NCBI RefSeq assembly: GCF_001194135.2
Contig: NC_068998.1
Coordinates: 54,856,534 to 54,920,533 of the forward strand
Direction: 5' to 3'
DNA from: Octopus bimaculoides
Taxonomy: Eukaryota
Length of the DNA: 64,000 nucleotides
This document shows, in pieces, positions 4,865-36,910 of the stretch (positions are counted from its first letter, which is position 1; every line of letters begins with the position of its first letter). Made by a program: the position numbers and the translations under genes. The notes below the pieces were generated by a model. The model ran no database searches, was not told the origin of the DNA, and saw only the letters and a list, made by a program, of their open reading frames with translations.

Positions 4865-7270
4865 ACCTTACTTCAGTAATTTTTTCTTCAGTTTCAACAA
4901 TTCTCTCTTCAAGTATCTTCCTGGTTTCAGAAACATCTGACAACTCACTCTGCAAGTTAGAAATTTGGTAAACCAATTCCTCTCGTTCAATTTCATGAGC
5001 TTCTTTAAGTCTGAATATTTCTTGCATTCTAAAAAAAAAATAAAGGAATCAGATGAAGAAATTAGTGATTGACTTGTTTAAGGAAGCAGAGGAGGACAAG
5101 TGTGGGGTAGGGGTGTTGGATTCCTTACCAAAGGACTAACAATTCACACATTCTAGCACAGTGTTGGTTCCACTCTTGACTCTGTGTTGAGTCAATGGGG
5201 AAGCCTCTATGCAGTTGTCAACTTAATAGAAATAGCAGTCTAATTTCCATCAAATCCTTTCATTTTAAATAATAATAATAATAATGAACAAGAAGAAATA
5301 TCAGTCATTGTAGCCCCCAACACACAATAATGTGGGATGGACACAACTGGAACTCTTTGGTCAAAGATCCTTTTTTATCACAGCTGACCAGAAGCCAAGC
5401 AACACTTACACCTTTGCTGGACCCATGAATAAGATACTGAACACTTGCTGATCAATTCTTCTTCTTCACCATCTGTGGTTTACATAATTGACTATAAGCC
5501 TGACCACTTCTTGTCAAACTGTCCAACCCTTGCCAGCATGGAAGGAGGACATTGAACGATGAGGATAAGGAGGAGGAGGGGTTTTTTTTCCCTAAATTTT
5601 TACCAGTTGCTAACAATTTAAAATATGTTTTCTCAACATGATTATTCAATATCTTCAGAGTTTTCGTTTAACATAAAGAATTTCATGTTCAGTTGCAAAA
5701 ATTAAATTAAAACTTGGTATTTTTCAAAGTTTCTTTCAATTTAATTACAACATGTACAACAAAAGATTTGATTTAATTACTGAGAAATCAAAAATAATAT
5801 TTAAAATTTTTAATTTTCTTACAATAATTTTTCTTATTCAGCCAAGTCCAAATTTAATTTCTTGCTTTAATCATAAGGTATAAAAGAGGAATATTTTCAC
5901 TGAATTTTTCCATTCAGTTGCTGCTAAACAACAATCAGAGGATAATTTCTTCTAATTCTTTTACAATTAAACCATTTCTTACACGTGATTGCAAGAAATG
6001 TAGGTAAACGCTCCAGTGTTGAATTTTCAGTTAAAATATTACAAAACATTCTCAAAGTCAATGTTTTCTTGGTCTAACCAGGAATTTTGGCATTTCTGAA
6101 CTTGATTAGTATTGGAACCAACATTGATTTCAGGATCTCATCTACTGAGTGAAGAAATGGCAAGCATTGTCCTTGGTCTCAGACATTAAACTACAAACTA
6201 CACAGAACAACAATCCTTTTTACTAAAACAACCTTCAGATACACAACACTCTTATAACATGGACATACAAGATATAAATGGAAAAAAAGAGGTGCCAAGA
6301 TGTGAGGACAGAGAAAAATTGATGTCAGTTCAAAGTTAGATAACTCAAGTAACTTCATGCCAAAACAGAGTCTCCATCAACCGAATTTCATTCTCAGGTT
6401 GATAATACTGATCAACACAAATGTATGGTTGAAGAGTTCTTACCCTTGGTGTGCTGAACAGTGGGATCAAACCTGGAACCGTGCAGTTTCAGAGTAAATT
6501 CCTTAATCCCAAAGCCATACCTGTGTATAACATAACTGACAGACCAGGAAATTGGAGAGCCTCCACACGGTCATTCAACCTGCTATAAACAGTAGCCAAA
6601 GCTCCCTCAAATGACACCATACTGACTTAATGAACACTTTGGATAATGTATTCCTAGATAAATAAAAAAGGTGTGTTGATCATGACTGGAATGTCTTTTG
6701 CTTAGCCAGGGCTGACACAGTTTAACAGTGACATCTGGTCCTTGGGTACCTTTAGCAACGTCCACTCTGTTACATGTATTTGAACCAGGCTTTCAGTTTA
6801 AAGATAACATCATTCCCCCCTTTACACCAACTTCAGGAGGCCTGGCAAAGGGCCATCGGTGCAGCTTTCTTTGTTTCATTAACAGAAAAGAAATCTTTAT
6901 AAAGTCTGTAGACCCTAACCAAGAGTTGTGATACAACATGTGAACAATTATAGAATGCTACCTCGACTTACTTTTGTTCTTCATTAACATCCAATGCCGT
7001 TCCTCGATCCAAGGTCGAAGATATATTCTCAATCTCATTCTTCAGGCCTTCTATGGCTTCTTTATAAGTGAGTTCCTTCTCTTGGTTTTGATCAACGAGT
7101 TTCCATGCCTTTTCCACTTCCTACAACATATCCATTCAATGTACACACACAGTTTACAATCAGTTGTGTGTGTGTGTGTGTGTATGTGTGTGTGTGTGTG
7201 TATGTATGTGTATGTACATAGATCTATGGACACATACACACATATATGTTTATATATACATACATATATA

Positions 7271-7338
<68 letters not shown>

Positions 7339-7985
7339 CATACATATATATATATATATATGTATAATCTATGAGTGGTTTTCTCCAATCAGATTGAAGC
7401 TTGGTGTCGCCTCCCGGTCCACCAGTCCTCAGTGAAATTGTCCAACCCATACTAGCATGGAAAACGGACGTTAAACGATGATGATGATATGTATGCATGT
7501 ATGTATATTCATATATAGGCACGCATATTTATGGTGGTGCTCCAGTATGACAGCAGCCACATGGCTGAAACATAAAAGAATGAAATATATATCCAACAGG
7601 CTTTGATAGAATTTTGCCTTCCAAATTTTACCCCCAAAAATTTGGCTGCACCAAATGTGGCACGGAGAGAAAGGTAAGCTAAATTAACAAATAAAAATTT
7701 GAAATGGAAAGTGTTACCTTCTTAAGGGAAGCAATGTTCGTTTGGTCTTCTTCGGACAAAATCATCAGATGGGATACTTTGGCCCCTTGGGCTATCATCT
7801 CAGCATTTAACTCCCGACATTTTAACATTAACCTTTTTTCATTTTCATGAGATTTCTTCAAGGCTTGATGTAATTTTTCATATTCACCTCTGAATTTATC
7901 AAGAGTTTTGTTTGCTGCCAACTCTTGAAGGACCTGTGAAATATTTCGTAGAAAATTTCTTAAAACATCACATTATATATGTATG

Positions 7986-8020
<35 letters not shown>

Positions 8021-11000
8021 NNNNNNNNNNNNNNNNNNNNNNNNNNNNNNNNNNNNNNNNNNNNNNNNNNNNNNNNNNNNNNNNNNNNNNNNNNNNNNNN
8101 NNNNNNNNNNNNNNNNNNNNNNNNNNNNNNNNNNNNNNNNNNNNNNNNNNNNNNNNNNNNNNNNNNNNNNNNNNNNNNNNNNNNNNNNNNNNNNNNNNNN
8201 NNNNNNNNNNNNNNNNNNNNNNNNNNNNNNNNNNNNNNNNNNNNNNNNNNNNNNNNNNNNNNNNNNNNNNNNNNNNNNNNNNNNNNNNNNNNNNNNNNNN
8301 NNNNNNNNNNNNNNNNNNNNNNNNNNNNNNNNNNNNNNNNNNNNNNNNNNNNNNNNNNNNNNNNNNNNNNNNNNNNNNNNNNNNNNNNNNNNNNNNNNNN
8401 NNNNNNNNNNNNNNNNNNNNNNNNNNNNNNNNNNNNNNNNNNNNNNNNNNNNNNNNNNNNNNNNNNNNNNNNNNNNNNNNNNNNNNNNNNNNNNNNNNNN
8501 NNNNNNNNNNNNNNNNNNNNNNNNNNNNNNNNNNNNNNNNNNNNNNNNNNNNNNNNNNNNNNNNNNNNNNNNNNNNNNNNNNNNNNNNNNNNNNNNNNNN
8601 NNNNNNNNNNNNNNNNNNNNNNNNNNNNNNNNNNNNNNNNNNNNNNNNNNNNNNNNNNNNNNNNNNNNNNNNNNNNNNNNNNNNNNNNNNNNNNNNNNNN
8701 NNNNNNNNNNNNNNNNNNNNNNNNNNNNNNNNGAGGTTGGTCTTCAAGCGACAAGTGACCATTCCTAAAACGTGAAAACCACTCATAAACTTGTGTCTTG
8801 CTCATGCCAGCAGCATCCTTGTAAGCTGTTTGAAGCATGGTAACTGTTTCAGCTGCTGTTTTCCTGAGCAGAAAAAAAAAATTCATGGAAGCATGCTTCT
8901 TTCATTTCAGCCATTGCAAAAATCAATGAACAGGTGAGAAGTACTGCAAAACAAAGACGTATCATGTGGCAGTACAACTTCAATCGACCAGTTGGCAGAC
9001 TGATGCCTGAGGGTCACATCAAGTGGCTTCTAGTGACAGAAACCTGAACTACAATGGGTTTGTCCCACAGAGAACGTTTCCGGTTACTATTGGGTACCCC
9101 CTCGTATATGTATATATATAAAATGACAGGCTTCTTTCAGTTTCCATCTACCAAATCCAGACAAGGTTATAATAGAAGAAACTTACCCAAGATGCCACGC
9201 AGTGGGACTGAACCCAAGACCACATGGTTGGGAAGCAAACTTCTTACCCACACAGCCACGTTGGCATCTATGCACTTCTGGAAATATTTTCATTCAGCAT
9301 TGGAAATTACTAAATCATTCCCCAACTTTAAAAAGTGGTGTAATTCTAATAACCCTGTGTCTATGTCCAGTTCATTGGAATGTCTTTGGACAGGGGCGGG
9401 GCCACAGACTTCCACATCTGAGGCTGGTTGTAGCCCCTCCACCACCACCACCACTGGTTTGTTTTAAACAGAAGCAACTTGTCTTTTAGAATAATAAATC
9501 TGATAAATCAAAAATTATTGCTTACTTCTTGAAATTCTTGTTCCATAGTATTAAATGCGGTGTCATCAAAAGCCAATTTGTCGACTTTACTTTGCCCGAA
9601 GAGTTCCTCCTCAATTTCTTCTTTTGTGTCCTACAAAATATATAAAGACAATTTAATGTATAAGAAATAGTCATCATCATCATCATCATCATTATTGTTA
9701 GTAACGCAGTTCTTAGTCCATGAAAGACTGCTTTGATGATCGCTATTACTGTCATTCTGGAACTTTCTGCCTACATGTGCAAAGGCACTTTGGATCGATG
9801 TTAAACCTCTGCGCCTTTGTTTTCGTTTCGGGTGATCTATGTCGTTACTGATGTGAAAATTATTTGTACTGATCAGTATCTTCCTGGTTTTCACATCAAT
9901 GGCTCATCTAAAAGGCCCTTCAAACAGCAATAAATATTGGCTTCAAATTTTGGTACAAGGCCAGCAATATCGGGGGCAGGGGAGGGAACCAGTAGATTAC
10001 ATCGATCTTAGTGCTCAACTAGTATTTATTTTATCGACTCCAAAAAGAAGGTGACTCCGGCGGCATTTGAACTCAGAACGTAAAGAAGGACAAAATGCCA
10101 CTCAGCAGTTTGCCCGGCGTGCTAACGGTTCTGCTTGCTCACTGCTTTAAACAGCTACAAATATTAATAAACCTTTTTCAAATCACACTTCTATAAAGTA
10201 ATCCAAAGTTTCAATTAATTTTTGACGCCAATGATACATGGGAGGCAACTCTTTAAGTCTCGTCTAGAAAACACAAAAAAAATATTCGCCAAATATTTCA
10301 AAAGGCGAAATTATTTATAAAAATAAACGTTTGTCATTGAAATGAAAGCTTTAATAATTAATATGTATTGAAGCCCGAGAGGAATGGAAATGTTACATTC
10401 TGTATGTTACGTATAGCATTTATTTACATCTCTCTTCGACAACATTGTCGCTGAAGGGCACTTTGGTTAAAACTCCTTAGATTTTAGTTTTTTTTCTTCC
10501 ACAATACCGTTGAAGTGGAATTTAATAAACAGGAACTGTGTAAAGCCAGTCGTATTTCTAACGAAATAATCTTTATTGTATTTTGCGGTTCGATTCTAAT
10601 ATAATATAGTCTTTTAAAGAGGCCAACATACTTTTGCTTCGCCAGAAATCAGACGACAAACTGTTAATATTACATTTTTTTTTTCAAATATTATTCAGAT
10701 AAATAGAACTTATTTGGGTTCACGAAAAAGATATTGCTACAGGAGGGGGGGTAAGTTATAGCTTCTTAGAAGGTGTATACTCCCTTTAAAGTTTTATAAT
10801 TCATTTTATCTTAAACGAATCGATGACAGTAATTCTCCATGATAACGTAATTTGAATTGCTTAAAATAGCAGCCAAATCTATTTTAAATTACACCCTTCT
10901 GACTAAAAACATAAAGGGGCCCACATTGCATAATGTTGTCGACTGCTTGAAAAAAATATATGGGATGATCAAAGCTGGAACGCCACAAATTATGGGTAGT

Positions 11001-11255
11001 CAGATACATTGTGAATTTAACCAGAAGCAGTTGACTATTAGAGTTATAAACGATAATTCAAAAATTTATGCTTACTTCTGAAAAATGATCATCCATACTT
11101 TTAAACATGACATCCTCCTCAGCTTTTTTGCCTTTGTCATCTGGTTTTCTGTCATCACCTGCTTTGTCTTTACCAGCTGGCTTCACTTCCTTGGGCAGTT
11201 TTTCTTCTTGTGCTTTCTCTTCCTTCTTTTGGCTGTCAGTCTCCTCTTTTTTTTC
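1063..11255 (-). CDS. CFAP58: Cilia- and flagella-associated protein 58 (CCDC147), 5' part of a multi-exon gene. Start codon not firmly located; 3' exons lie beyond the left edge.
   Basis: Eight GT-AG exons with consistent phases (11076-11255, 9526-9630, 7718-7933, 6972-7120, 4872-5028, 3938-4132, 2799-2936, 1063-1222). Spliced translation ...[11 protein letters not shown]|[46 protein letters not shown]...|[10 protein letters not shown]... is collinear with human CFAP58 as recalled ([57 protein letters not shown]...EIEKAWKMVD). Confidence 0.93.
1672..1742. repeat. (AAT)n microsatellite
   Basis: Near-perfect trinucleotide run. Confidence 0.95.
1742..1890 (+). mobile_element. tRNA-derived SINE (Octopus-type family A)
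   Basis: GTGGCTGT...GGTTCAATCCCAC B-box, then GTCTTCTACTATAGCC...GGTAGATGAAAACTGAAAGAA ending in (CA)n; related copies elsewhere in the window. Confidence 0.8.
2799..2936 (-). CDS. CFAP58: CFAP58 exon ([46 protein letters not shown]), phase 0-0
   Basis: TTTCAG acceptor, AAG|GTAAGA donor, 138 nt; coiled-coil sequence in the expected collinear position. Confidence 0.9.
3938..4132 (-). CDS. CFAP58: CFAP58 exon ([27 protein letters not shown]...LEEMK), phase 0-0
   Basis: TTTCAG acceptor, GTAAGT donor, 195 nt. [12 protein letters not shown] matches the recalled REFRKKEKLEKE. Confidence 0.92.
4872..5028 (-). CDS. CFAP58: CFAP58 exon ([18 protein letters not shown]...ETEEKITE), phase 2-0
   Basis: T-tract TAG acceptor, GTAAGG donor, 157 nt; phase matches the 6972 donor. 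Confidence 0.9.
6972..7120 (-). CDS. CFAP58: CFAP58 exon ([49 protein letters not shown]), phase 0-2
   Basis: TTGTAG acceptor, GTAAGT donor, 149 nt. EVEKAWK motif. Not shown in this frame by the ORF track. Confidence 0.93.
7385..7490 (+). mobile_element. RTE-type LINE/SINE 3' tail
   Basis: TGTCCAACCCATACTAGCATGGAAAACGGACGTTAAACGATGATGATGA; related tails at ~5520, ~30570, ~43690 and (minus strand) ~56975. Confidence 0.65.
7718..7933 (-). CDS. CFAP58: CFAP58 exon ([21 protein letters not shown]...TNIASLKK), phase 0-0
   Basis: CAG acceptor, AAG|GTAACA donor, 216 nt; the most conserved CFAP58 N-terminal block. Confidence 0.95.
8733..9106 (-). mobile_element. Tc1/mariner element: 5' TIR and transposase N-terminus, frameshifted, running into an N-gap
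   Basis: TA followed by TIR-like CGAGGGGGTACCCAATAGTAACCGGAAA ending at 9104. ATG at 8914 (MAEMKE...), then a 1-nt shift into [48 protein letters not shown] (mariner HTH). Confidence 0.88.
9110..9265 (-). mobile_element. tRNA-derived SINE (family A)
   Basis: Reverse complement of GTGGCTGTGTGGGTAAGAAGTTTGCTTCCCAACCATGTGG...GTTCAGTCCCACTGCGTGGCATCTTGGG. Confidence 0.85.
9526..9630 (-). CDS. CFAP58: CFAP58 N-terminal exon B ([35 protein letters not shown]), phase 0-0
   Basis: TTGTAG acceptor, GAA|GTAAGC donor, 105 nt. The end matches human VLEESAFEEMERDFQG. Confidence 0.88.
9930..10145 (-). mobile_element. SINE family B (central-domain SINE)
   Basis: GGCTTCAAATTTTGG...TACATCGA...TATTTATTTTATCGAC...GGCGGCATTTGAACTCAGAACG; homologous copies at ~19480, 21032, 21345, 21650 and 35610. 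Confidence 0.75.
11076..11255 (-). CDS. CFAP58: CFAP58 N-terminal exon A, paralogue of exon B ([60 protein letters not shown]), phase 0-0
   Basis: GATAG acceptor, GAA|GTAAGC donor, 180 nt open. Same terminal F-x2-M-x3-F-x-E motif and similar intronic flanks as exon B. Confidence 0.72.
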
Positions 11256-11658
11256 CTATCAAGTATATAAAAACACTTTGATGGATGAAATCTATCTTTA
11301 CACTTTGAATAAACAACATCAACAAAGGAAACCAGAACAACATGACACGAGAGAAAACTTTTGCCAAATGAGCTAATTCTAAGTTTTATCCCATTTGATG
11401 ATGGATCTCTTTCTAGAAATCAAGAATTGTAACTAACTGCAATACTTTACAATAGGAATGTATTACAAACAGAATGAACAGAGCAATATATGTTTATAGT
11501 GATATCTATTTAACAAGACTTCTTTATTGGAAGAGCCTCAGATCTTAAACAATCATATGAAGTGTTAAACAAACCACAAATGGTAGAACCTCAAAGAAAG
11601 TCAAATAACAAAACCAGGAAGAACATTAATTTGAAATATAGTTCTGCATGCTGATGCA

Positions 11659-11691
<33 letters not shown>

Positions 11692-14109
11692 CGATGGCTT
11701 TCTACTTGTGACAGAAGAACACCCTCACTGACCATTAAAAACATTGTGCACTCAAGCAGCAATGTCCATGCAAAATGTCAGCCATGCTTGTGCAACATTT
11801 CAGGTTCAATGAGCCTTGCATGATACCTCACAGACCCTATTGGCATGATCGAGAGGCAACCCAACCAAAGATATCTCGTGCCAATACAGGTCACAATCTC
11901 AGGAACATGGGATCACCATGATCTCAAGTGCAAACAAAAGACCCCAAGATATCCAGTGCCATTTCTTACATATCCAGTGGTGTATCAGAATGCCTTTTCC
12001 AAGAGACATGTTCTGTTGCCAACAACCCAACCATGCATCAGCTTGTACTGCATTCCATACATACATACACACATACATGCATGCATACATACATACACAC
12101 ATTTATTATGTATGGCTTCCTTTCTTAAGGTTTCTTGTCAAGACTGGAGGGGAAAGACGAGATGTTCATGGTCGGAATGTCTTTGATTTATAGATCCATT
12201 CTATCAGGGACAGACCTGAGGTTAAGCAACGATAACTATTTTACTGAAACATGACATAATCCTGTTAATAAATCTACCTGCCAGTCAGTCTGTCTGTCTG
12301 TCTGTTTCCTCTCTCCCTCTCCCATACAATAATGGCTTCTGTTCCTCAGACCTGGTTGCCACTCACCCCCAACCTCCACCCCCATCCCATGTATTTTTGA
12401 CCCACTTCCCTCTCTTCCTCACAACCCTCATCTTGAGTTCACCTCCTCACGACCCCCCAGCTTCACAATAATCCCTACACACAATCTTTCCTTCCCAGAA
12501 CCCCCTCCCTCTACAATTCTCCCCCCCCCCCACACACACACTCATCAAGCTTCAAGAAAAACAGGACCAACGTCAAATCTCACCAATTTAGGAAAGGAAC
12601 GATCGCAATGGCTGTGGCCAACGCCTCTTCCGCCGGAGCCAAAAAATAACAAAGAAAAAAAAACAAGAAATAATCCTCTCGCTCATAGAGGGGGGGAGAC
12701 GGGGAGAGAGAAGGGGAAGAGAAAAAGAGAGGGGAAAACACATTCAGAGAGAGAGAGAGAGAGAGAGTAATATGTGATGTTTATACTTTTCCTCAAAAAC
12801 CTTGGCAACATTAACCAACTAGGAATCGAACCCTAGATATGAGAATGGATCCTATACAACAACAACAACAGTAATAACATGGGAGCTTGTACGTGGTTAC
12901 TCGTGCTAGAAATAACAGCCAAAAAAAGGATGCATTTAATAATGTAACTTGAGGTACACAATGCATGAATAACAGGTGGAGTAGTCACGACTGAAACGCC
13001 TTTAATCGTAGCTTTGCTAGATTGAGGATGACCTGGGGTTAGATGACAACAACAACAACAACAACAATAACGAGCCTTACAATCATGCGGTTGATTGCGA
13101 TGAGTTCTTCAATCACCCACAATAGACGGAAAGAACGATACGTTATATATAAGAAAAAATACGTTATATATGTAACATAACCCACATAACATAAATAAAT
13201 GAATATATATAAAACAAATAAATATTATATATNNNNNNNNNNNNNNNNNNNNNNNNNNNNNNNNNNNNNNNNNNNNNNNNNNNNNNNNNNNNNNNNNNNN
13301 NNNNNNNNNNNNNNNNNNNNNNNNNNNNNNNNNNNNNNNNNNNNNNNNNNNNNNNNNNNNNNNNNNNNNNNNNNNNNNNNNNNNNNNNNNNNNNNNNNNN
13401 NNNNNNNNNNNNNNNNNNNNNNNNNNNNNNNNNNNNNNNNNNNNNNNNNNNNNNNNNNNNNNNNNNNNNNNNNNNNNNNNNNNNNNNNNNNNNNNNNNNN
13501 NNNNNNNNNNNNNNNNNNNNNNNNNNNNNNNNNNNNNNNNNNNNNNNNNNNNNNNNNNNNNNNNNNNNNNNNNNNNNNNNNNNNNNNNNNNNNNNNNNNN
13601 NNNNNNNNNNNNNNNNNNNNNNNNNNNNNNNNNNNNNNNNNNNNNNNNNNNNNNNNNNNNNNNNNNNNNNNNNNNNNNNNNNNNNNNNNNNNNNNNNNNN
13701 NNNNNNNNNNNNNNNNNNNNNNNNNNNNNNNNNNNNNNNNNNNNNNNNNNNNNNNNNNNNNNNNNNNNNNNNNNNNNNNNTGCCCAGACTCCAGTTGTTA
13801 CAAAGGCAAAATGATTAAGAAACTTACACATATATTAAGAACATGTTAACTTTTAAGAACCAAATCACCAACTTCTATGTGTAGTTTGCTTTGAGACTGG
13901 TGGAATTTGTCTTTTAGAAAGTATAGAGAGTAGAACTATTTCCTGGTGGCTTTTTATCTATATTTATTATATATATATATATTTTTTTTTTTTTTAGGGT
14001 AAAGGATTGAAAATTACGACATTGAAACCTTTCCACGAAAAGAGATACAAGGAGATGAAAAGTCTGGAATTTATCAAATTCCTCTGCAACACCAAACTTA
14101 AGAAATCTA

Positions 14110-19310: not shown

Positions 19311-19479
19311 AAGAAATAAAAACTGGAACATCTTTGATCAAAGACTTTCTACAAGGCTGACTTGGAGTTAACTAATGAATATCTTTTAGAAAAATGAAAT
19401 GAGTGTAAGTTCTTATAAACAATGCAATTAGGTTCCACAAACGATCAACAAATAACGGCATGAAAGAATCTCCTTATAA

Positions 19480-19680
19480 TAATGGTTTCAAATTTTGGCG
19501 CAAGGTCAACAGTTTAAGGGGACGGGGACAAGTCGATAACATCAACCACAGTAACCGACTCGTACTTATTTTGTCGACTTCGAAAGGATGAAAGGCAAAC
19601 TAGACTTAGGCAGAATTCGGAAGAAATGCTGCGGAGCATTTTGTCCGGTGTGCTAACGATTCTGCCAGCTCACAGCCTGA
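19480..19680 (-). mobile_element. SINE family B
   Basis: GTACTTATTTTGTCGACTTCGAAAGGATGAAAGGCAAA core and GTGCTAACGATTCTGCCAGC head. Confidence 0.8.
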
Positions 19681-21185: not shown

Positions 21186-21344
21186 ATAACTGATTGAATA
21201 ATTGTTCCAAATCCCAGTTATTTAATTACTCTTTCGTTTCTTTGTTTTTTAATTAATATATTAATTGTTAAAATAAATCTGAAACTATTACTTTAGGCCT
21301 TTGTTGCATCCTAACATAATCAATGACAGACAAAATGCTTTGCG

Positions 21345-21500
21345 GCATTTCGTCTCTCTTTAAGTTCTGAGTTCAAATTCCACCCAAGTTCACTTTGCCT
21401 TTCATCTTTTCGGGGTCAGTAAAATAAATACAAATTGAGTACAGGGGGTCAGTGTAAACGACTTACTCCCCCAAAATTCCAGGCCTTGTGCCTATTATAG
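21345..21500 (+). mobile_element. SINE family B, opposite orientation
   Basis: GTTCTGAGTTCAAATTCC...TTTGCCTTTCATCTTTTCGGGGTC...AAAATAAATAC. Confidence 0.75.
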
Positions 21501-27831: not shown

Positions 27832-30800
27832 ATATAGCTGTACAACTCTGAGACCTTTTTTTTCCCCTCCTAGCTAGTATTTTTTAGTAAGAGTAGCTGC
27901 TAGTCATGTCCCTAAATTTTTCCCACAGAATCTTATTTATTAACCCTTAAAGAACAGAAAGCAAGTTAACCCCATTGAAATTTCAACTCACAGCTATGAA
28001 GATATGACAAATGCTCACAGCTAGTGCCATTGAAAACCCAACTATGTTCTAACCAAATCACAGAGTACCATTAGAAGATGGTCTCACCAATGTGGTTTGA
28101 ACACTTGATCTGTAGATTTAGCATCCAAAAGAATTAGGGTAGTTTTAAGTATCCTGTTTTTAAAACTTCTTTCCACAATTTAATGATTCAAAATAATATA
28201 GATGTATATTAACTTATGTGTGTATATGTATTAGATAAACTGCAGAGTTGTAAAGCATTTCACTTTTAAATATAGTTTCGAATATAGTTTGTGCTCTTCT
28301 AATAAGTATATGGTGTTACTGATTGAAAATATTGTATTTGCTATTTTATAGCCATGCTTCAGAAAGATGAGAGCCAACTGGGACCTGACATGCAGGATTC
28401 TCATGACGTAAGAATTTTTTAATAATGCTATAAAATAGATTCTTACATAAAAACTCAGTACTCTAATTTATGGTTTGACAGTCAATGTTTCTGTGGAACA
28501 CTTAGTTTATTGGTTGCTTATAAACTGGATTTATATCTATATCAACATTTTCAAGAATAACACACACAAAAATAGAAAAGAATATGTTGACCAAAACATT
28601 ACAGAAAATAAACTTTGTTGAATACCCTGTATAGATATAGCTTTGAGTTAGCTGTTAAGGTTTAACACTCTGTTACTGCTAATATAGTCTATTTAAGTGA
28701 AGCATTAAATTGTGTGTGGTTGAACCTCAGTACAAAATGCATATAATTCCATTTTGTGATAGAACGCTTAGTAAATGGAAAGGCTGATCCAACCCCTGTC
28801 CTTATGCAAAGAACATCAATAAACAACATATTTGCAGAATCATTCAGTTATACCAGCATAAATATTGGATGTAAAATGGAAAACAAAACCCCAACATCTG
28901 TATATTGACTTGTCTCACATTCATGGCAAAACATAAAAGATGATGTTGATTTAGATTTACTATTGTGAAGTCCTTTGATACCTGTGGATTAAAAGCATAC
29001 CACCACATCTGTATATGTGCGTATGGCACTTCCATGGAGTTGTTTCCATTTAGTGTTTCAATTTCATTCAGGAGGCATCCGTTAACCAACAGAAGACACC
29101 TCAGTTGCAATACAATAGGACTCAACTTGGAACCATGTGTTTGCCCAAGCAACCTCATAACTCTACATCCTTTACCAGCAGCCTGTCGAAACTAAACCAC
29201 ATCAACTATTCAGTCTTGTACGTTGTTTCTGCTAACTTGCTACTCTCATATCTAGATATCCTATTATTATCGTTATTGATACCTTAATTCTCCTAAATTA
29301 TTCACATTAAGCATGTTAATTTATTCTTTGTTAATTTTGCTTTTATTTCAGCAAAAGAAAAAACCTGGTTGGACTAAAGGTAAAAAAAGGAAAGCAACAA
29401 TGAAAGATAAAAATGCTCCAAAGCAGCCTTTAACTGGTTATGTACGTTTTTTAAATGAGCGACGAGAAAAGTTGCGCCAGGAGAATCCAAATCTCTCATT
29501 TTCTGAAATAACCAGACAGCTTGGTGGTGAATGGTCTAAATTGGCACCACGAGAAAAACAGGTAATCCATTTGATTATCTTTTTTTTTTTTTAAATTAAT
29601 TATTCAATTCTGTTGTGACAAATCTTGTTTTATGTCAGTAATGGTCGACTGATTGAATTAAATCTATTTTCACCCAACATCTTTGTAAAACTCAACAACC
29701 AATAGTTTTATGCTTCTAATTTTTTTCTTAATGTGGGTTGTTCCAGTTTGTTTTAAAGCAAATAGAAAACTGTCAAATTGGTTTATCATCCTATATATTA
29801 ATATTGTTTTATTGCATTTCATTGCTAACCACAATTGCATGCTTTTATCAGTGTCAGTAAATAAAGAAAATTGTACCAAAACAGAACATTTCTCTCGATA
29901 TCAGAGTTCCATAGTTCCTCGTGCTTATTGGTTTCTTTTCTTTACAGCGATACCTTGACGATGCAGAGAAGGACAAAGAACGATATTTACGAGATATGGA
30001 AGCTTACCAAAAGACAGATGCATATAAATTATTTAAACTCCAAAAGGAAAAAAAATTAAAAAGTAAGGCAATTTATTTATCCTGGCAGAAGGTAAATTTC
30101 TCAAATATTGTTTCCGAGAACAAAATAAAAATGTTTGGTTAAAAAGTCCTAAATTAGTAAGAAAAATATATTCAAAGCAAACAGAAACAAGAACACTAAT
30201 GAGGCTTGAACCCTATATTGATTGATTACCGTATATTAACAGTTTTGCTAATTGAATGACAGACAGGTGTGTGTGTGTTTTCTTTTACATTATTTTTTCG
30301 TTTTAGGAAAAATAGGATTAGTTTTCACAGGTTTAAAGACAAGATGTGGACTGAGTAACCTTGAACAAAGGGGAGCAGTAACAGAATAAAGGAAAATCAT
30401 TAATCCTTGCAGATTAAACGAAATGTGCCATCCATACTGTAAAGTGACTGGCAATAAATGGGGAAGGGTATCCAGCAAACTTGTCACAACAACAACGATT
30501 GGTGGTTTTTCTTTGTTGTGCATTTCAGATGATGAACAAACATGACAAGTAGGAAGATGGTGTGAAACCTATCCAACTTTATGCTAGCATGGAAAATCAG
30601 ACATAAAAGAATGATGATGATGATGATGATGTGTATTACATCATCTTTAAATTTGCAGCTGGATACCTTTCAATAACCTTTAAAATATGCAAGCTGTTGA
30701 TCAGCCAATCAAACTGATGCAAATAGCTATGTGCCTTACCCAGTGCCCATAATGCAGCAATTGCTATATATTTTTCTATTATATCTCATGTAAATATTCT

Positions 30801-33423
30801 GAAAATAATAATGGATATTCTCCTTAAGTCTTTGAAGAAGAGTTGGTTTAGAATTTATATAATATTCAATAATTTTATAGTTAAAAACATTCCTTGAATG
30901 AAATAATATTGATTAAAAAATAATTTACATGTTGTATACAGCTAACTTGACAAATTAGATCCAAGACCAAGTTTCTGTTGTGATGTCCCCCGGGGAAAGG
31001 TAAACATACCGTTGCTGTCATTGTTCCTTCTCAACACATGAGAATATACAAAAATAAATCATTTTTCTTTTCCAGGTGATATAAGAGAAGATTATGATGG
31101 TCAAAATGGTTCTGCTCTACAGGTAAATACAATTTCATGAAAGTATTTATATGGCTTAGCTTTTAATCCAAGCTGAGTTTGTGTGTGTGTGTTTTGGCAG
31201 TAGACAGATTCCTTTCAACATCAACTTTGTAAGGCTAAAAATTCTACATTAATTCTCGCAGTGTCACTTTTTCTTGTGATTCAACATTAAAAAATGCAGA
31301 AGCATTGAATTTATTCATATCAAGCCTGAGAGAGAGAATTATTAAGCAAAACAAAAGGATGTGAATGCTCTGGAATGTTGTAGTCTATGAAATAGATGTG
31401 ACTTGAGCGATTTATATGAAATGACATATTTTACTGCTCGTTATCAATGTCTAGCACTTTCAGGTGGGGGGCGGGGAGTGGAAAGAAGATACACTTATTT
31501 TTCATTGAAGTAAACGTTGATTAAATAGAATTATTATATTTTCTGGAGTACAGAACAAGAAATGAAGTATTTGCTGATAAGACCAGAGTAAAAAGTCTTG
31601 TAGTTTATCAGTTCCCATGCACCTGTTGTTCGCTGGAATTTATAATAGGCATTTAGTGAACAGCTAAAGGTTATATATTTATTATTTGAAGACTAAATGT
31701 TAATCTTTAATCTTTATCCATTACAGCCTGAAAAGGATGAAGAGGATTATGGAACATTTGATATTCCTGTTTTTACTGAAGAATTTCTGGATCATAATAA
31801 AAGTAATTATTTTAAAATCATATTTCATGAATTCTTAAAAGATCGTCAACATTTGTTCCATTTTGATGTTAAAGAAAATATACAAACATAAAATTACTTT
31901 AAATTTGGTTTGAAGTTTTATTTTGAAATTAATTTCCTTGGTTTTACCTTTTGTTTTCAGCACGTGAACAAGAATTACGGCAGCTACGGAAGCAGACCAC
32001 CGAACTAGAAGAACAAAATGCTATTCTAAGTAAACATATCGAAAACATGAAACATGCTATAGAGAAACTTGAATTGGAAGCTGTACAACAAAGGAACCAC
32101 AATATGGCTCTCCAGTGTCACTTAAATACACTTCGTACAATTTTGACAACTAACTTTGCAAATGTGCGATTGCCAGGTAAGATTCTGTTAGATTTCTTTC
32201 TATTAATTTTGTTTGTTTTCAAGTAAATACCTCAATACTAAAACCTGATGGTCAGGGTGGTGGCAGTATTGTTGTTAAACTGTTTTATATGTAAAGCCTA
32301 ACTTTAATAAATCTTATTTCAAATTAAATACTTTATAAATAAAAATATTTTTACTTCATCATTGCCTAGTTTCAGGTTTGATCTCCCAAAAGCTTGAAAC
32401 TGGAATTTAGGAGAAAATTGTGTGGCCGTCCGTCGAAGGGACAGTTGTTGTTTTTGGATGGTAGATTTAATCCATCATCCACTTCAACACCACCATCTCC
32501 TCTTTCAATACTCTTTCATACAGTCAATTCCGTTGCGTGTCTTTGGCTTACACCTCTGCTCCGTGGGCTTATCCTCTTCTCTCTCACGAAACCATCGTGT
32601 TTCATTCTTGATATGTATTATTTTTAACTTTTAATTGTTTTTGATAAACAACACAATTTATATTATTTCATGCATTTTGATGCAAACTTCTTGAATGTTT
32701 TCTAGTTTTGTCATAATGTTCTTCTGTTGTTTCCAGGTACAAACGAAGTTCCTACACTAGAAACTATTGATTCTTATATGGCAAAATTGCATTGCATCAT
32801 TCTGGAAGCTCCTCAAGAAAATGAAAGCCTCATTGTTACAGTAAGGGAAATTGTTGGAAGACTAAATGTTGACGGGTGAGTTTCTCATTTAGAAAACTAA
32901 AATTATGTCAACTAATTAGAAACATAATGAAAAGGAATAAAGCAAGGGGAAGCTTGATGTGATCCTGAAGAGAGATATTGGTTCAGGTAAAAAAAAAATA
33001 AAGAGACTTTTGACAGAAAATAAGTCAAGAGAAGCATCCAAGCTCGATGAATAGCATAGAATAATCTCCAACACGTATTAGCTTACTTTCATTATAATCT
33101 TGAAACAGATGATTGGGATAAAGAGGTGGAAGACATAATTAAAATTCCCTTAATTTTTTGATAATGTGTATGAGGGTGGGGAGTTGTCTTAAAAGTTTGT
33201 CCTTGTGTCGGTACTTTTGAAATTCTGATTTTATGAATTTGGTATATTTATATAAATAAATAAATAAATAAGCAAAAAAGCAAGACAACAATAGGGAAAC
33301 TAAAGTCCATGCTAGTTCTTCTTGATATCTGGGAAGTTTATACTCTGATATCACAGCTAGATTTGATCTGGTCTGAACAATAATCTATTTTTATTCAACA
33401 ACTTTTCACATACTCTTATCCTT

Positions 33424-34910: not shown

Positions 34911-36910
34911 ATCAAATAGATTTTCTAATAAGGTCAGATAATTTCCAGTTGGAATTATATTCATTTTGGAATTTGTATTAATTTTCTCAGAAAGATTAAA
35001 TTGTTAAAAATTTGACGGGGTTAATTTTATTTTTGCATACCCCTTTTTTTTTTTTTGAATGGCGATGGTAATATAAACTGCTATTTTTATGTTTAATGTT
35101 GCCTGCATTTTAATCACCATTGACTATTAAACAACTCTCTGGACTACAATAAATAGACTAATTGAACTGACATTTTGTAGCATCTTTCTCATGCTTTCTA
35201 GTTTCCAAGCATTTCCAAACAAAATTGATAGAATTTTCTTGCTCCCTGCATTAAATATGTTAACACGAGCTTGACTATTGTTTTTGCTTTGGATGGCCTC
35301 TCTGAGTAATTAACTGCAGTGATACATTTATTACAAATCTCGTGATGTTCCTGTCTACTCCTGTGCATTGTTGTCCATTGACCTGGTGATTCTCAGTTCA
35401 CTATTTCAGTGAGGTGAAGTTGAATCTTTACTGGAGAGGTTTAATAGCATCAAAACATGTCTGAAGTTGTCTCCCTTAGTTGCTGACATGATTGGAATCC
35501 TATTACTAATTGAGCTAATGTTGCACTGTTCAAGTAACCCATCTTTTTTTAGACCAAGACAAAAGAGCAATGTGCATGATAACACTTGCGATCAATTAAG
35601 ATCAGAAGCCATGAAAGCTTAGCGACATCTGACTTTGTTTTGAATTCAAATGCCATTGGGGTCAACTTTACCTTTCATCATTTTGGGGCTGATAAAATAA
35701 GCACCAGTCAAGTACTGGGCTCAATATAATTGCCTTTACCTTCTCCCTGAAATTGGTGACCTTGTGCCAAAATTTATTAATATAAATGGCTTGTAAGCAT
35801 CTTGATGGAGCAGATCTCTCTCTTTTTTAATTATTTCAATATTGAAGAAGTCTGGAGTTTTTTTAGCTTTCTGATCCTGTAGGTTTTTTTTTTTTTTCCT
35901 TTCAATTTGTTGACTTTTTGTTTATTTATTATCTATTTTGTAGTCCATATGCTACCTTCGATTATTTTCTATAACAGAATGATGCATGTTTGTATCTGTG
36001 AAGCTTTTCACTTCAGTTTCGTAAAAAAATGCATCAAAGACCAATAAAGACATTCTGTATTCAGCATGAACAAGGATGCTTTATTTCAGATGACTTAGAA
36101 ACACTGCCTTATCCCTGCCACTTCCCCCCACACACTTTTTTTGCTTCTTTTTGTTTTTATTGATATATCCCAACTCATTAATTGTGGAATTGTCATTTGT
36201 TTACTAATAGAATGAAGTCATCTCTTCCCTCTAATCCGCTGCATTCGTTTTAACACTGTTTTTATTGTTGTTATTGTTCCAATCATTTAATGTTTGTTTT
36301 TGTTTTGTTTTTGTACATATATAGCGTTGCTTTTTTTTCCCTGATGGTCTCTCACTTGTTTGCTTTGGCATTCTTCATTTATTTTCTTTTTTACTTTTTT
36401 TCCAATTTTGAGTGTGTCCTGCTTACACTCAAAACCGGATTCTCTTATCATTTGATGTCCAGTCAAATATCAAAAACAGATCTCACTCGAGGGGCAGCAG
36501 GCTCCATGTGCACAGCCTTTTTTTTGTTTGTTTGTTTTTTGGGGTTTTTTGTTCTGTTTTTCAATCAGAGATTTTTATTTGATTGTTTGTTGGGCCAAAT
36601 GACTGGTTTAGGTTCTGTTTCATGATTCAAATTAATACTCATTTCTTTTTTTAGGAGTATTTCTCATAATCTGACCGTACAGTTTCTTCTGCGTTCATTT
36701 GTCGTATTACAAGATAATCATAATCTTCAGTTACATTTTTATTTTCACCTTTTTTTTTCTGCAAATGTTCTCAATTGTTGAACCCTATCCATTATTCAGA
36801 TTTCAAGACTTCATTTGTTATACAAGGTAAGTTCTGGATCTTTAAACTTCAGAATCATTCAAACCCCATGTCTAAATAACGTTCTATGTTTGAGAAAAAA
36901 ATTTGTTGCA

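What the first reader, a model, noticed from the sequence alone, without database searches (positions are those of the whole stretch)
9501..11276. Tandemly duplicated CFAP58 N-terminal exon with conserved intronic flanks (possible alternative or mutually exclusive N-termini)
Seen in sequence: exons A (11076-11255) and B (9526-9630) are both phase 0-0 and similar at both ends. They start EKKEET versus DTKEEI and end [18 protein letters not shown] versus [18 protein letters not shown]. The first 25 intronic nt after the donors are 21/25 identical (GTAAGCATAAATTTTTGAATTATCG vs GTAAGCAATAATTTTTGATTTATCA), and the last 21 nt before the acceptors are 16/21 identical. Exon A has an extra ~25 aa K/E/D-rich stretch. 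Established knowledge: the shared terminal motif corresponds to the single conserved start of CFAP58 (human VLEESAFEEMERDFQG, from memory). Inference: a whole-exon duplication now allows A-only, B-only or A+B isoforms that change the head of this axonemal coiled coil, perhaps by tissue (sperm versus sensory or epidermal cilia). Flanks conserved while the codons diverged hint at a retained splicing element.
Basis: partly seen in the sequence, partly recalled or inferred. Interest (0 to 1): 0.72.

Follow-up and report, generated by a model that had tools for sequence, protein, structure and literature searches.

The report
Duplicated CFAP58 head exon, both copies used
An octopus-like cilia gene (CFAP58) has a real tandem copy of its N-terminal exon, but public RNA data splice both copies into the same messenger one after the other, so this is an ordinary lineage-specific lengthening of the protein's head and not a switch between alternative heads.

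Summary
On the minus strand, exon A (11255..11076, 180 nt) and exon B (9630..9526, 105 nt) are both phase 0-0. They are homologous at both ends and into both flanking introns: 51/60 on the donor side and 24/32 on the acceptor side, with blastn E 2e-11. Exon B is the orthologue of the universal CFAP58 head (AFxxxAFxxxExxFQE|VLQEL). Exon A is an extra upstream copy.

The proposed alternative or mutually exclusive use is not supported. Assembled RNA contigs from 10 runs, plus raw reads from one more (6 studies), all read exon1-A-B-exon3. The same A->B junction occurs in three related species. No contig shows exon1->B or A->exon3.

Exon A is coding:
- An upstream exon, absent from the window, ends in ...CCACGATGGAGGAG. 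That places an ATG in frame with exon A.
- Only that frame of exon A is open.
- Indels in two sister species are +3 and +18 nt.
- The last ten codons (FKSMDD[H/Q]FSE) are nearly unchanged in a more distant species, while the K/E/D/P-rich middle evolves fast and is predicted to be disordered.

Verdict: a constitutive in-frame tandem exon duplication, which is a known kind of event. Interest is low. Minor tissue-specific isoforms are not excluded, because contigs drop rare variants.

The parts
11076..11255 (-). Exon A. It is the derived copy of the CFAP58 head exon, 180 nt and phase 0-0. It encodes a K/E/D/P-rich, predicted-disordered stretch followed by the conserved motif ...[13 protein letters not shown].
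   Evidence: Sequence and translation. RNA contigs cover 11075-11257. Only frame 0 is open. The exon is in frame in sister species at 183 and 201 nt. AF2 pLDDT is about 46-54 over these residues.
9526..9630 (-). Exon B. It is the ancestral CFAP58 head exon, 105 nt and phase 0-0. It encodes ...[18 protein letters not shown], the orthologue of AFESSAFEALERDFQE at the start of CFAP58 in other eukaryotes.
   Evidence: Alignment A1. PDB matches start at query residues 76-83, which correspond to chain residues 3-13. RNA contigs. The motif is helical with pLDDT 84-95.
9631..11075 (-). The 1445-nt GT..AG intron between A and B. It is removed in all transcripts seen.
   Evidence: The joint 9629/11075 'skips 1445, CT..AC' appears in X1, X2, X6, X7 and in X4 and X24 raw reads.
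11013..11075 (-). Donor-side intronic flank of exon A. It is homologous to 9463-9525.
   Evidence: Gapped alignment 51/60 identical. blastn E 2e-11. Repeat families D1 and D11.
9463..9525 (-). Donor-side intronic flank of exon B. It is homologous to 11013-11075.
11256..11287 (-). Acceptor-side intronic flank of exon A (polypyrimidine tract plus AG). It is homologous to 9631-9662.
   Evidence: 24/32 identical. Repeat families D2 and D5. Bins of 16/20 and 12/20 against a background of 5.1/20. No RNA run holds words from here, with a maximum share of 0.52, which is about the exon's own share of the query.
9631..9662 (-). Acceptor-side intronic flank of exon B. It is homologous to 11256-11287.
7718..7933 (-). 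Next CFAP58 exon ([22 protein letters not shown]...SLKK, 216 nt). In every contig it is joined only to exon B.
   Evidence: the loose end behind 7933 is the 3' end of exon B in X1, X7, X6 and X3. Sequence.
9933..10145 (.). Interspersed (SINE-like) repeat inserted in the A-B intron. It is not part of the duplication.
   Evidence: blastn finds copies at 19478-19676, 21331-21442 and 35637-35775. Contig depth is very high and comes from many unrelated contigs.

Best explanation
This is a constitutive, in-frame tandem exon duplication at the 5' end of the coding region of a CFAP58 gene, apparently from an octopus-like cephalopod. A segment holding the ancestral head exon, with at least ~35 nt of upstream and ~60 nt of downstream intron, was duplicated in tandem. 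The downstream copy (B) kept the conserved CFAP58 head, AFxxxAFxxxExxFQE, which leads straight into the coiled coil. The upstream copy (A) kept the splice signals and a recognisable version of the motif ([11 protein letters not shown]). It also gained a ~40-residue K/E/D/P-rich low-complexity stretch that changes quickly by substitution and in-frame slippage.

Both exons are spliced into the same mRNA in the order exon1(ATG GAG GAG)-A-B-exon3. The protein therefore begins MEE + 60 aa (A) + 35 aa (B) + VLQEL... Compared with CFAP58 of other eukaryotes, it carries a ~65-residue, mostly disordered N-terminal extension ending in a second, degenerate head motif.

Shown here: the homology, the splice junctions, the open frame, and conservation across related species. 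Inferred: translation starts at the exon-1 ATG. Also inferred: the extra motif is functional. In Chlamydomonas, the N-terminus of the paralogue MBO2 maps next to the tail of inner dynein arm b, so the octopus extension may add or extend a contact there. The conserved intron flanks are most simply the splice-proximal signals that each copy needs for efficient constitutive splicing.
For: Homology of exon ends and flanks.

Gene identity: matches to solved CFAP58 chains 9fqr_It (7.7e-41), 8glv_LP (2.4e-40) and 8j07_j1 (3.4e-39). The match starts at query residues 76-83, which lie in exon B, and at residues 3-13 of the solved proteins. In alignment A1 every other CFAP58 starts with M plus ~10-25 residues and then the head motif.

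Splicing: the A->B joint with GT..AG ends is in contigs of X1, X2, X6, X7, X4 and 2 raw reads of X24. There is a single contig over exon A in X2, X5, X18 and X27, and its downstream continuation is always the start of exon B. There is a single contig over exon B in X1, X7, X5, X8 and X17, with the end of exon A upstream and exon 3 downstream. There is a single contig over exon 3, with the end of exon B upstream.

Upstream exon: the X18 and X27 contigs carry 28-33 nt that are not in the window. In transcript sense they read AACATCGTATAAAAACATCCACGATGGAGG, followed by AG and then GAAAAAAAAGAGG. This puts ATG GAG GAG in frame, with A at -3 and G at +4.

Coding status of A: frames 1 and 2 contain stops and frame 0 has none. 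Organism B has a +3 nt indel and organism E has +3 and +18 nt, giving open 183- and 201-nt exons with an identical C-terminal 20 aa. In organism C the last 31 nt of exon A differ at 1 position (FKSMDDQFSE), whereas exon B differs at 11 of 102. The organism D transcript reads ...TTTCAGAA before exon B.

[quoted passage not shown] The MBO2 N-terminus is disordered and maps near the tail of IDA b (PMC11151096).
Against: All but one of the RNA data sets are assembler contigs, which drop rare variants. Minor or tissue-restricted isoforms would therefore be invisible. The raw-read runs gave only 1-2x depth here, and tissue identities are hidden by the coded run names.

Exon 1 is known for only 33 nt and has no in-frame stop upstream of its ATG. 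The true start could lie further 5'.

Six of the seven substitutions between organisms A and B in exon A are non-synonymous, so the middle of the exon is at best weakly constrained.

There is no protein-level evidence. AF2 gives no confident structure for exon A. No protein in either large library aligns to exon A, so its distribution beyond the four related species is unknown.
Confidence: 0.78

Rival explanations
1. Exons A and B are alternative: mutually exclusive exons, or independently skipped cassette exons. Different tissues would then make CFAP58 with an A-only, B-only or A+B head.
For: The exons are adjacent, homologous, in the same phase, and each is a multiple of 3, so any combination stays in frame. 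The intron flanks are unusually alike: 85% on the donor side against 70% for the adjoining codons. That pattern often accompanies regulated exons. Contig data cannot exclude rare forms.
Against: The A->B junction is the only form in 11 runs from 6 studies of the same species and in 3 related species. No second contig appears at any of the three acceptors examined. The lengths differ by 75 nt, which is outside the <=60 nt window used to define candidate mutually exclusive exons (PMC5740500). No docking/selector-type inverted repeats were found in the introns: the best are 14-24 nt at 71-93% complementarity, mostly AT-rich or simple sequence. An A-only protein would lack the invariant head that every other CFAP58 has.
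Confidence: 0.08
2. Most of exon A is 5' untranslated. Translation would start at the internal ATG of exon A ([11 protein letters not shown]...), giving a protein with a normal short leader before the head. The K/E-rich 'codons' would not be translated.
For: Exon A has in-frame ATGs 11 and 7 codons before its end. The resulting 29-residue leader would resemble the 10-25-residue leaders of other CFAP58 proteins. The 5' two thirds of exon A evolve almost without constraint on amino acids, with 6 of 7 changes non-synonymous, and are predicted to be disordered.
Against: The upstream exon supplies an in-frame ATG in a strong context (ccACGATGG), and a scanning ribosome would meet it first. Only that frame is open across all 180 nt of an A/G-rich exon. 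Both indel events in sister species are multiples of 3. Several out-of-frame ATGs lie between the exon-1 ATG and the internal ATG (read directly from exon A), and these would hinder leaky scanning.
Confidence: 0.1
3. The similarity is chance or low-complexity convergence between two unrelated AT-rich exon borders, or exon A is a dead duplicate.
For: Both introns are AT-rich and share generic splice consensus sequences (GTAAG, a polypyrimidine tract and AG).
Against: The alignment score is 21 sd above shuffles. blastn gives E 2e-11. Two independent homologous blocks lie in register with the two splice sites. Exon A is spliced into mRNA in four species and is intact in a fifth genome.
Confidence: 0.01

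Closest known systems
CFAP58 (CCDC147) / Chlamydomonas FAP58-FAP189, the L-shaped coiled-coil docking factor of the 96-nm axonemal repeat (PDB 8j07, 8glv, 9fqr; PMC10266980, PMC11151096)
   Same: Exon B plus the downstream exons align to these proteins from their residues 3-13 onwards at about 55-60% identity. The head motif and the coiled coil are the same.
   Different: In those proteins the head motif sits right at the N-terminus, after a short leader. Here it is preceded by ~63 extra residues (MEE plus exon A) that include a second, degenerate copy of the motif. None of about 700 library relatives aligns to that extension.
Constitutively spliced tandem exon duplications (internal protein repeats created by exon duplication)
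   Same: The two exons are adjacent and homologous, with the same phase and homologous intron borders. Both are included in the mRNA, so the protein is lengthened by an internal repeat.
   Different: Nothing essential differs. The only peculiarities are the fast-evolving low-complexity insertion in the new copy and the better conservation of the intron flank than of the adjoining codons.
Mutually exclusive exon clusters derived from tandem exon duplication (for example the human MXE atlas, PMC5740500, and Dscam, PMC1397879)
   Same: The origin by tandem exon duplication, the sequence similarity and the same reading frame (for the criteria).
   Different: The two exons are joined to each other in all transcripts seen. 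Joint inclusion keeps the frame. The lengths differ by 75 nt. No competing RNA structure is evident.

Membership tests
CFAP58 / FAP58-FAP189 family | Significant sequence homology to established CFAP58 proteins over the N-terminal coiled coil | tested here: met
   phmmer against PDB chains named CFAP58: 9fqr_It 7.7e-41, 8glv_LP 2.4e-40, 8j07_j1 3.4e-39. There are also 74 database relatives, among them an NCBI entry named cilia- and flagella-associated protein 58.
CFAP58 / FAP58-FAP189 family | Conserved head motif AFxxxAFxxxExxFQE immediately before VLxEL...EYEKLH | tested here: met
   Exon B ends [16 protein letters not shown] and exon 3 starts [22 protein letters not shown]. Alignment A1 has invariant F86, V96, L100 and E112-L116.
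CFAP58 / FAP58-FAP189 family | Location on the doublet microtubule surface (A04/A05 cleft) as part of the 96-nm repeat | not testable with these tools
   Known for the Chlamydomonas and human proteins from cryo-EM (PMC10266980). There are no data for this organism.
Tandem exon duplication | Two neighbouring exons of one gene with significant sequence similarity, in the same orientation and phase | tested here: met
   Both exons are phase 0-0 on the minus strand, 1445 nt apart.
Tandem exon duplication | Homology extends into the flanking introns, so the event was a genomic duplication and not convergence of coding sequence | tested here: met
   Donor side 51/60, acceptor side 24/32. Bins are far above the intronic background.
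Mutually exclusive exons | One and only one exon of the cluster is included; the exons are not joined to each other in mature mRNA | tested here: not met
   The A->B junction appears in every run examined. No A->exon3 or exon1->B contig was seen.
Mutually exclusive exons | Similar exon length (<=60 nt difference in the WebScipio/Hatje criteria) | tested here: not met
   180 against 105 nt, a difference of 75 nt. The criterion is from PMC5740500.
Mutually exclusive exons | A mechanism enforcing exclusivity: frame incompatibility with NMD, steric hindrance from a short intron, or competing RNA structures | tested here: not met
   Both lengths are divisible by 3. The intron is 1445 nt. No convincing selector/docking complementarity was found.
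Cassette (skipped) exon | Transcripts lacking the exon exist alongside transcripts containing it | tested here: inconclusive
   No skipping contig was found in any run. Contigs drop rare variants, however, and the raw-read runs had only ~1-2 reads here.

The most novel reading that the evidence does not exclude
The duplicated head may not be neutral padding. The conserved FKSMDD[H/Q]FSE motif of exon A could be a second functional docking motif, giving octopod CFAP58 an extra or longer-reaching contact at the inner-dynein-arm-b end of the 96-nm ruler. The unusually well conserved splice-proximal intron flanks could then allow regulated skipping of A or B in particular ciliated tissues, for example sperm against epithelial or sensory cilia, at levels invisible in assembled contigs.
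Probability: 0.1. Interest if true: 0.45.

Novelty: new member of a known kind. Interest (0 to 1): 0.2.

Why it matters
This is a clean, datable example of a conserved axonemal ruler protein being lengthened at its N-terminus by exon duplication in one animal lineage. Any annotation that treats A and B as alternatives, or that starts the protein in exon A or B, would be wrong, because the start codon lies in an unassembled upstream exon. If the extra motif proved to bind something, it would offer a natural variant for probing what the still-unmodelled N-terminus of CFAP58 does. In itself, though, constitutive exon duplication is common and opens no new question.

Tried and rejected
The cause was probably the (TG)n and (AT)n microsatellites at 7165-7366. 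I worked with short exon-only references instead.

2. The raw-read RNA runs X23 and X24 gave only 1-2 reads over the exons, and the intronic SINE flooded the tables. They are not usable for minor isoforms.

3. A search for the upstream exon in the window with up to 2 mismatches, and with k-mers of 10-12, found nothing. It probably lies in the N gap at 13233-13780.

4. I considered the GC-rich stretch with a GGTGAG donor at about 12584 as a possible first exon. I rejected it because its sequence does not match the 33 nt that the contigs carry upstream of exon A.

5. The search for homologous proteins and the 1.8-billion-representative phmmer search returned no cephalopod CFAP58. No protein aligned to exon A. 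The three hits that start near query residues 48-56 carry unrelated leaders. The duplication therefore could not be dated outside the four related species.

6. AF2 with a 16-sequence alignment gave no confident structure for exon A. I ran no fold search because it would be meaningless.

7. Pfam finds no domain in the N-terminal 220 aa.

8. No tRNA-like gene was called in the intronic SINE.

9. No inverted repeats suggest competing RNA structures.

10. No paper in the library mentions CFAP58 together with octopus.
Full report
**1. What is in the sequence**

The gene lies on the minus strand.
- Exon A is 11255..11076 (180 nt): [60 protein letters not shown].
- Exon B is 9630..9526 (105 nt): [35 protein letters not shown].
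- Each follows a pyrimidine-rich tract plus AG and precedes GTAAGC.
- The next exon is 7933..7718 ([22 protein letters not shown]...SLKK).

**2. Is the similarity more than chance?**

Yes.
- A Smith-Waterman alignment of the two exons with 150-nt flanks scores 75. The mean for 500 shuffles is 20.6 (sd 2.6, max 34).
- blastn of 9300-11500 against the whole window pairs 11016-11105 with 9463-9555 at 76% over 93 nt, E 2e-11. Apart from a dispersed repeat, nothing else stands out.
- The repeat finder independently returns a donor-side block (54 nt, 78%), an acceptor-side block (51 nt, 76%) and a 14-nt block at 93% further into the intron. Their start-to-start spacings are 1550, 1625 and 1553 nt, in register with the two exons. 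The 75-nt difference between the donor-side and acceptor-side spacings is the extra length of exon A.
- Anchored on the splice sites, identity is 17/20 after the donors and 16/20 then 12/20 before the acceptors. It then falls to the intronic background of about 5/20, whose 99.9th percentile is 11.
- With gaps, the donor-side intron flank is 51/60 identical. The acceptor-side flank is 24/32. The last 30 coding nt are 21/30.

This is a genuine duplication of the exon with its splice-proximal intron sequence.

**3. Which gene, and which copy is ancestral?**

A query of MEE+A+B+exon3+exon4 matches solved CFAP58 chains:
- 9fqr_It, 7.7e-41
- Chlamydomonas 8glv_LP, 2.4e-40
- human 8j07_j1, 3.4e-39

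The alignments begin at query residues 76-83, inside exon B, and at residues 3-13 of those proteins. In an alignment of 15 relatives, every protein starts with M plus 10-25 variable residues, followed by AFESSAFEALERDFQE|VLQEL. Exon B ([16 protein letters not shown]) is therefore the orthologue of the universal head.

Exon A ([15 protein letters not shown]) keeps the F, M/L, acidic, F and E positions but is an extra upstream copy. Of about 700 significant hits in a 1.8-billion-representative library, none aligns to exon A. The few with alignments starting at query residues 48-56 have unrelated leaders.

**4. How are the exons spliced?**

- Public RNA runs of the same species (coded organism A) hold the exons but nothing upstream of 11257. 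The maximum word share was 0.52, about the exon's own fraction of the query.
- Contigs of X1, X2, X6 and X7 contain a joint 9629/11075 that skips 1445 nt with CT..AC ends, which is GT..AG on the minus strand. The same joint is in X4 and in two raw reads of X24.
- Exon A laid alone: each of X2, X5, X18 and X27 has exactly one contig, and its downstream continuation is the first 30 nt of exon B.
- Exon B laid alone: each of X1, X7, X5, X8 and X17 has exactly one contig, continuing upstream into the last 30 nt of exon A and downstream into exon 3.
- Exon 3 laid alone: each of X1, X7 and X6 has exactly one contig, continuing upstream into the end of exon B.

Ten contig runs and one raw-read run, from six studies, therefore agree on the order ...A-B-exon3. 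No contig joins A to exon 3 or anything other than A to B.

Caveat: these are assembler contigs that drop rare variants. The two raw-read runs gave only 1-2x depth. Minor or tissue-restricted isoforms are not excluded.

**5. The real N-terminus**

Contigs of X18 and X27 extend 33 and 28 nt beyond the acceptor of exon A with sequence that is not in the window. In transcript sense it reads AACATCGTATAAAAACATCCACGATGGAGG, followed by AG and then GAAAAAAAAGAGG.

- This puts ATG GAG GAG in frame with exon A, with A at -3 and G at +4.
- The protein starts MEE-EKKEET... A and B are internal coding exons 2 and 3.
- Exon 1 is missing from this assembly and is most likely in the 548-nt N gap at 13233-13780. 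That gap lies just upstream of a GC-rich stretch and well before the next gene, an HMG-box gene on the plus strand from about 29.3 kb.
- The 33 nt contain no in-frame stop, so an even earlier start cannot be excluded.

**6. Is exon A coding and maintained?**

- Only frame 0 of exon A is free of stops.
- In organism B (RNA run X3, genomic run X16) exon A has 7 substitutions and a +3 nt insertion.
- In organism E (genomic run X19) it has the shared substitutions plus insertions of 3, 4 and 14 nt. The last two are adjacent, making 18 nt. I take them to be one event split by the aligner, which is my inference.
- The reconstructed exons are 183 and 201 nt and open.
- All changes lie in the K/E/D/P-rich middle, and 6 of 7 substitutions are non-synonymous. 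The last 20 residues ([20 protein letters not shown]) are identical.
- In the more distant organism C (X12) the transcript reads ...DEKTPDDENT-FKSMDDQFSE joined to exon B. The last 31 nt of exon A differ at one position, whereas exon B differs at 11 of 102.
- In organism D (X14) the 8 nt visible before exon B are TTTCAGAA, the end of exon A.

Exon A is spliced into mRNA, and it has no stops or frameshifts in sister species. The pattern is a conserved short motif behind a rapidly evolving linker. AF2 agrees: pLDDT is about 46-54 over exon A, 84-95 over the head motif of exon B, and above 90 over the coiled coil.

**7. The conserved flanks**

The donor-side flank is 85% identical between the copies, against 70% for the adjoining codons. 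The duplication is older than the split from organisms C and D, whose exon B already differs by about 11% from the window. I infer that 85% identity between paralogous intron flanks is higher than neutral drift would leave. That points to constraint on splice-proximal elements, or to gene conversion. This rests on about 60 nt and remains suggestive only. The A versus B/E comparison (2-4 changes per ~80 nt of flank) is too shallow to test it. No long complementary elements of the docking/selector type are present.

**8. Comparison with what is known**

In kind, this is a constitutive tandem exon duplication. It shares its origin with mutually exclusive exon clusters but fails their defining features:
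- the two exons are joined to each other;
- joint inclusion keeps the frame;
- the length difference of 75 nt exceeds the 60-nt criterion (PMC5740500).

The gene belongs to the CFAP58/FAP58/FAP189 family. [quoted passage not shown] For the paralogue MBO2, the disordered N-terminus maps next to the tail of inner dynein arm b (PMC11151096). Whether the added motif changes contacts there is speculation. No paper in the library links CFAP58 and octopus.

**9. Verdict**

The novelty is that of a new member of a known kind, and interest is low (0.2). The best remaining unusual possibility, at about 10%, is regulated skipping at low level or in unsampled tissues, combined with a functional second head motif.

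Noticed in passing
Upstream of window 11257; probably the N gap at 13233-13780: The first coding exon of CFAP58 is absent from the assembled window. It ends ...AACATCGTATAAAAACATCCACGATGGAGGAG and carries the start codon. Gene models built on this sequence alone would therefore mis-start the protein.
   Followed up: partly
window 9933-10145 (copies at 19478-19676, 21331-21442, 35637-35775): An interspersed SINE-like repeat sits inside the A-B intron. Hundreds of unrelated RNA contigs carry it at very high depth. ARAGORN calls no tRNA in it.
   Followed up: partly
window 8734-8901, minus strand: An open stretch, [56 protein letters not shown], matches the Mos1/mariner transposase HTH domain (PF17906, E 1.9e-08). 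This is a mariner-type transposon fragment in the B-exon3 intron. It runs into the N gap at 8021-8732.
   Followed up: partly
window ~29280-32223, plus strand: The neighbouring gene is transcribed divergently from CFAP58. It has an HMG-box exon (PF00505, E 9.5e-14) and a downstream coiled-coil exon ([31 protein letters not shown]...), which looks HMG20-like.
   Followed up: partly
window 11201-11213 (exon A), in organisms B and E: The K/E/P-rich part of exon A expands by in-frame slippage in sister species. Organism B has +GAA. Organism E has an extra EEKPP/EEKPQ unit, +21 nt in all. This is a small coding microsatellite-like hotspot.
   Followed up: yes
window 11073-11115: Tandem Repeats Finder reports a two-copy 22-nt repeat (81% matches) spanning the last codons of exon A and its donor: GGATGTCATGTTTAAAAGTA against GGATGATCATTTTTCAGAAGTA. 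It may be a micro-duplication inside the motif, or it may be chance.
   Followed up: no
window 12300-12700: A GC-rich, G-run and CT-rich stretch lies about 1-1.4 kb upstream of exon A and includes a GGTGAG donor-like site at about 12584. It is not the exon seen in the contigs. It could be promoter-proximal sequence or an alternative non-coding first exon.
   Followed up: no
window 9671-9692: A perfect (TCA)7 microsatellite lies about 40 nt upstream of the exon B acceptor. Its length varies in RNA and DNA reads that derive from other loci.
   Followed up: no
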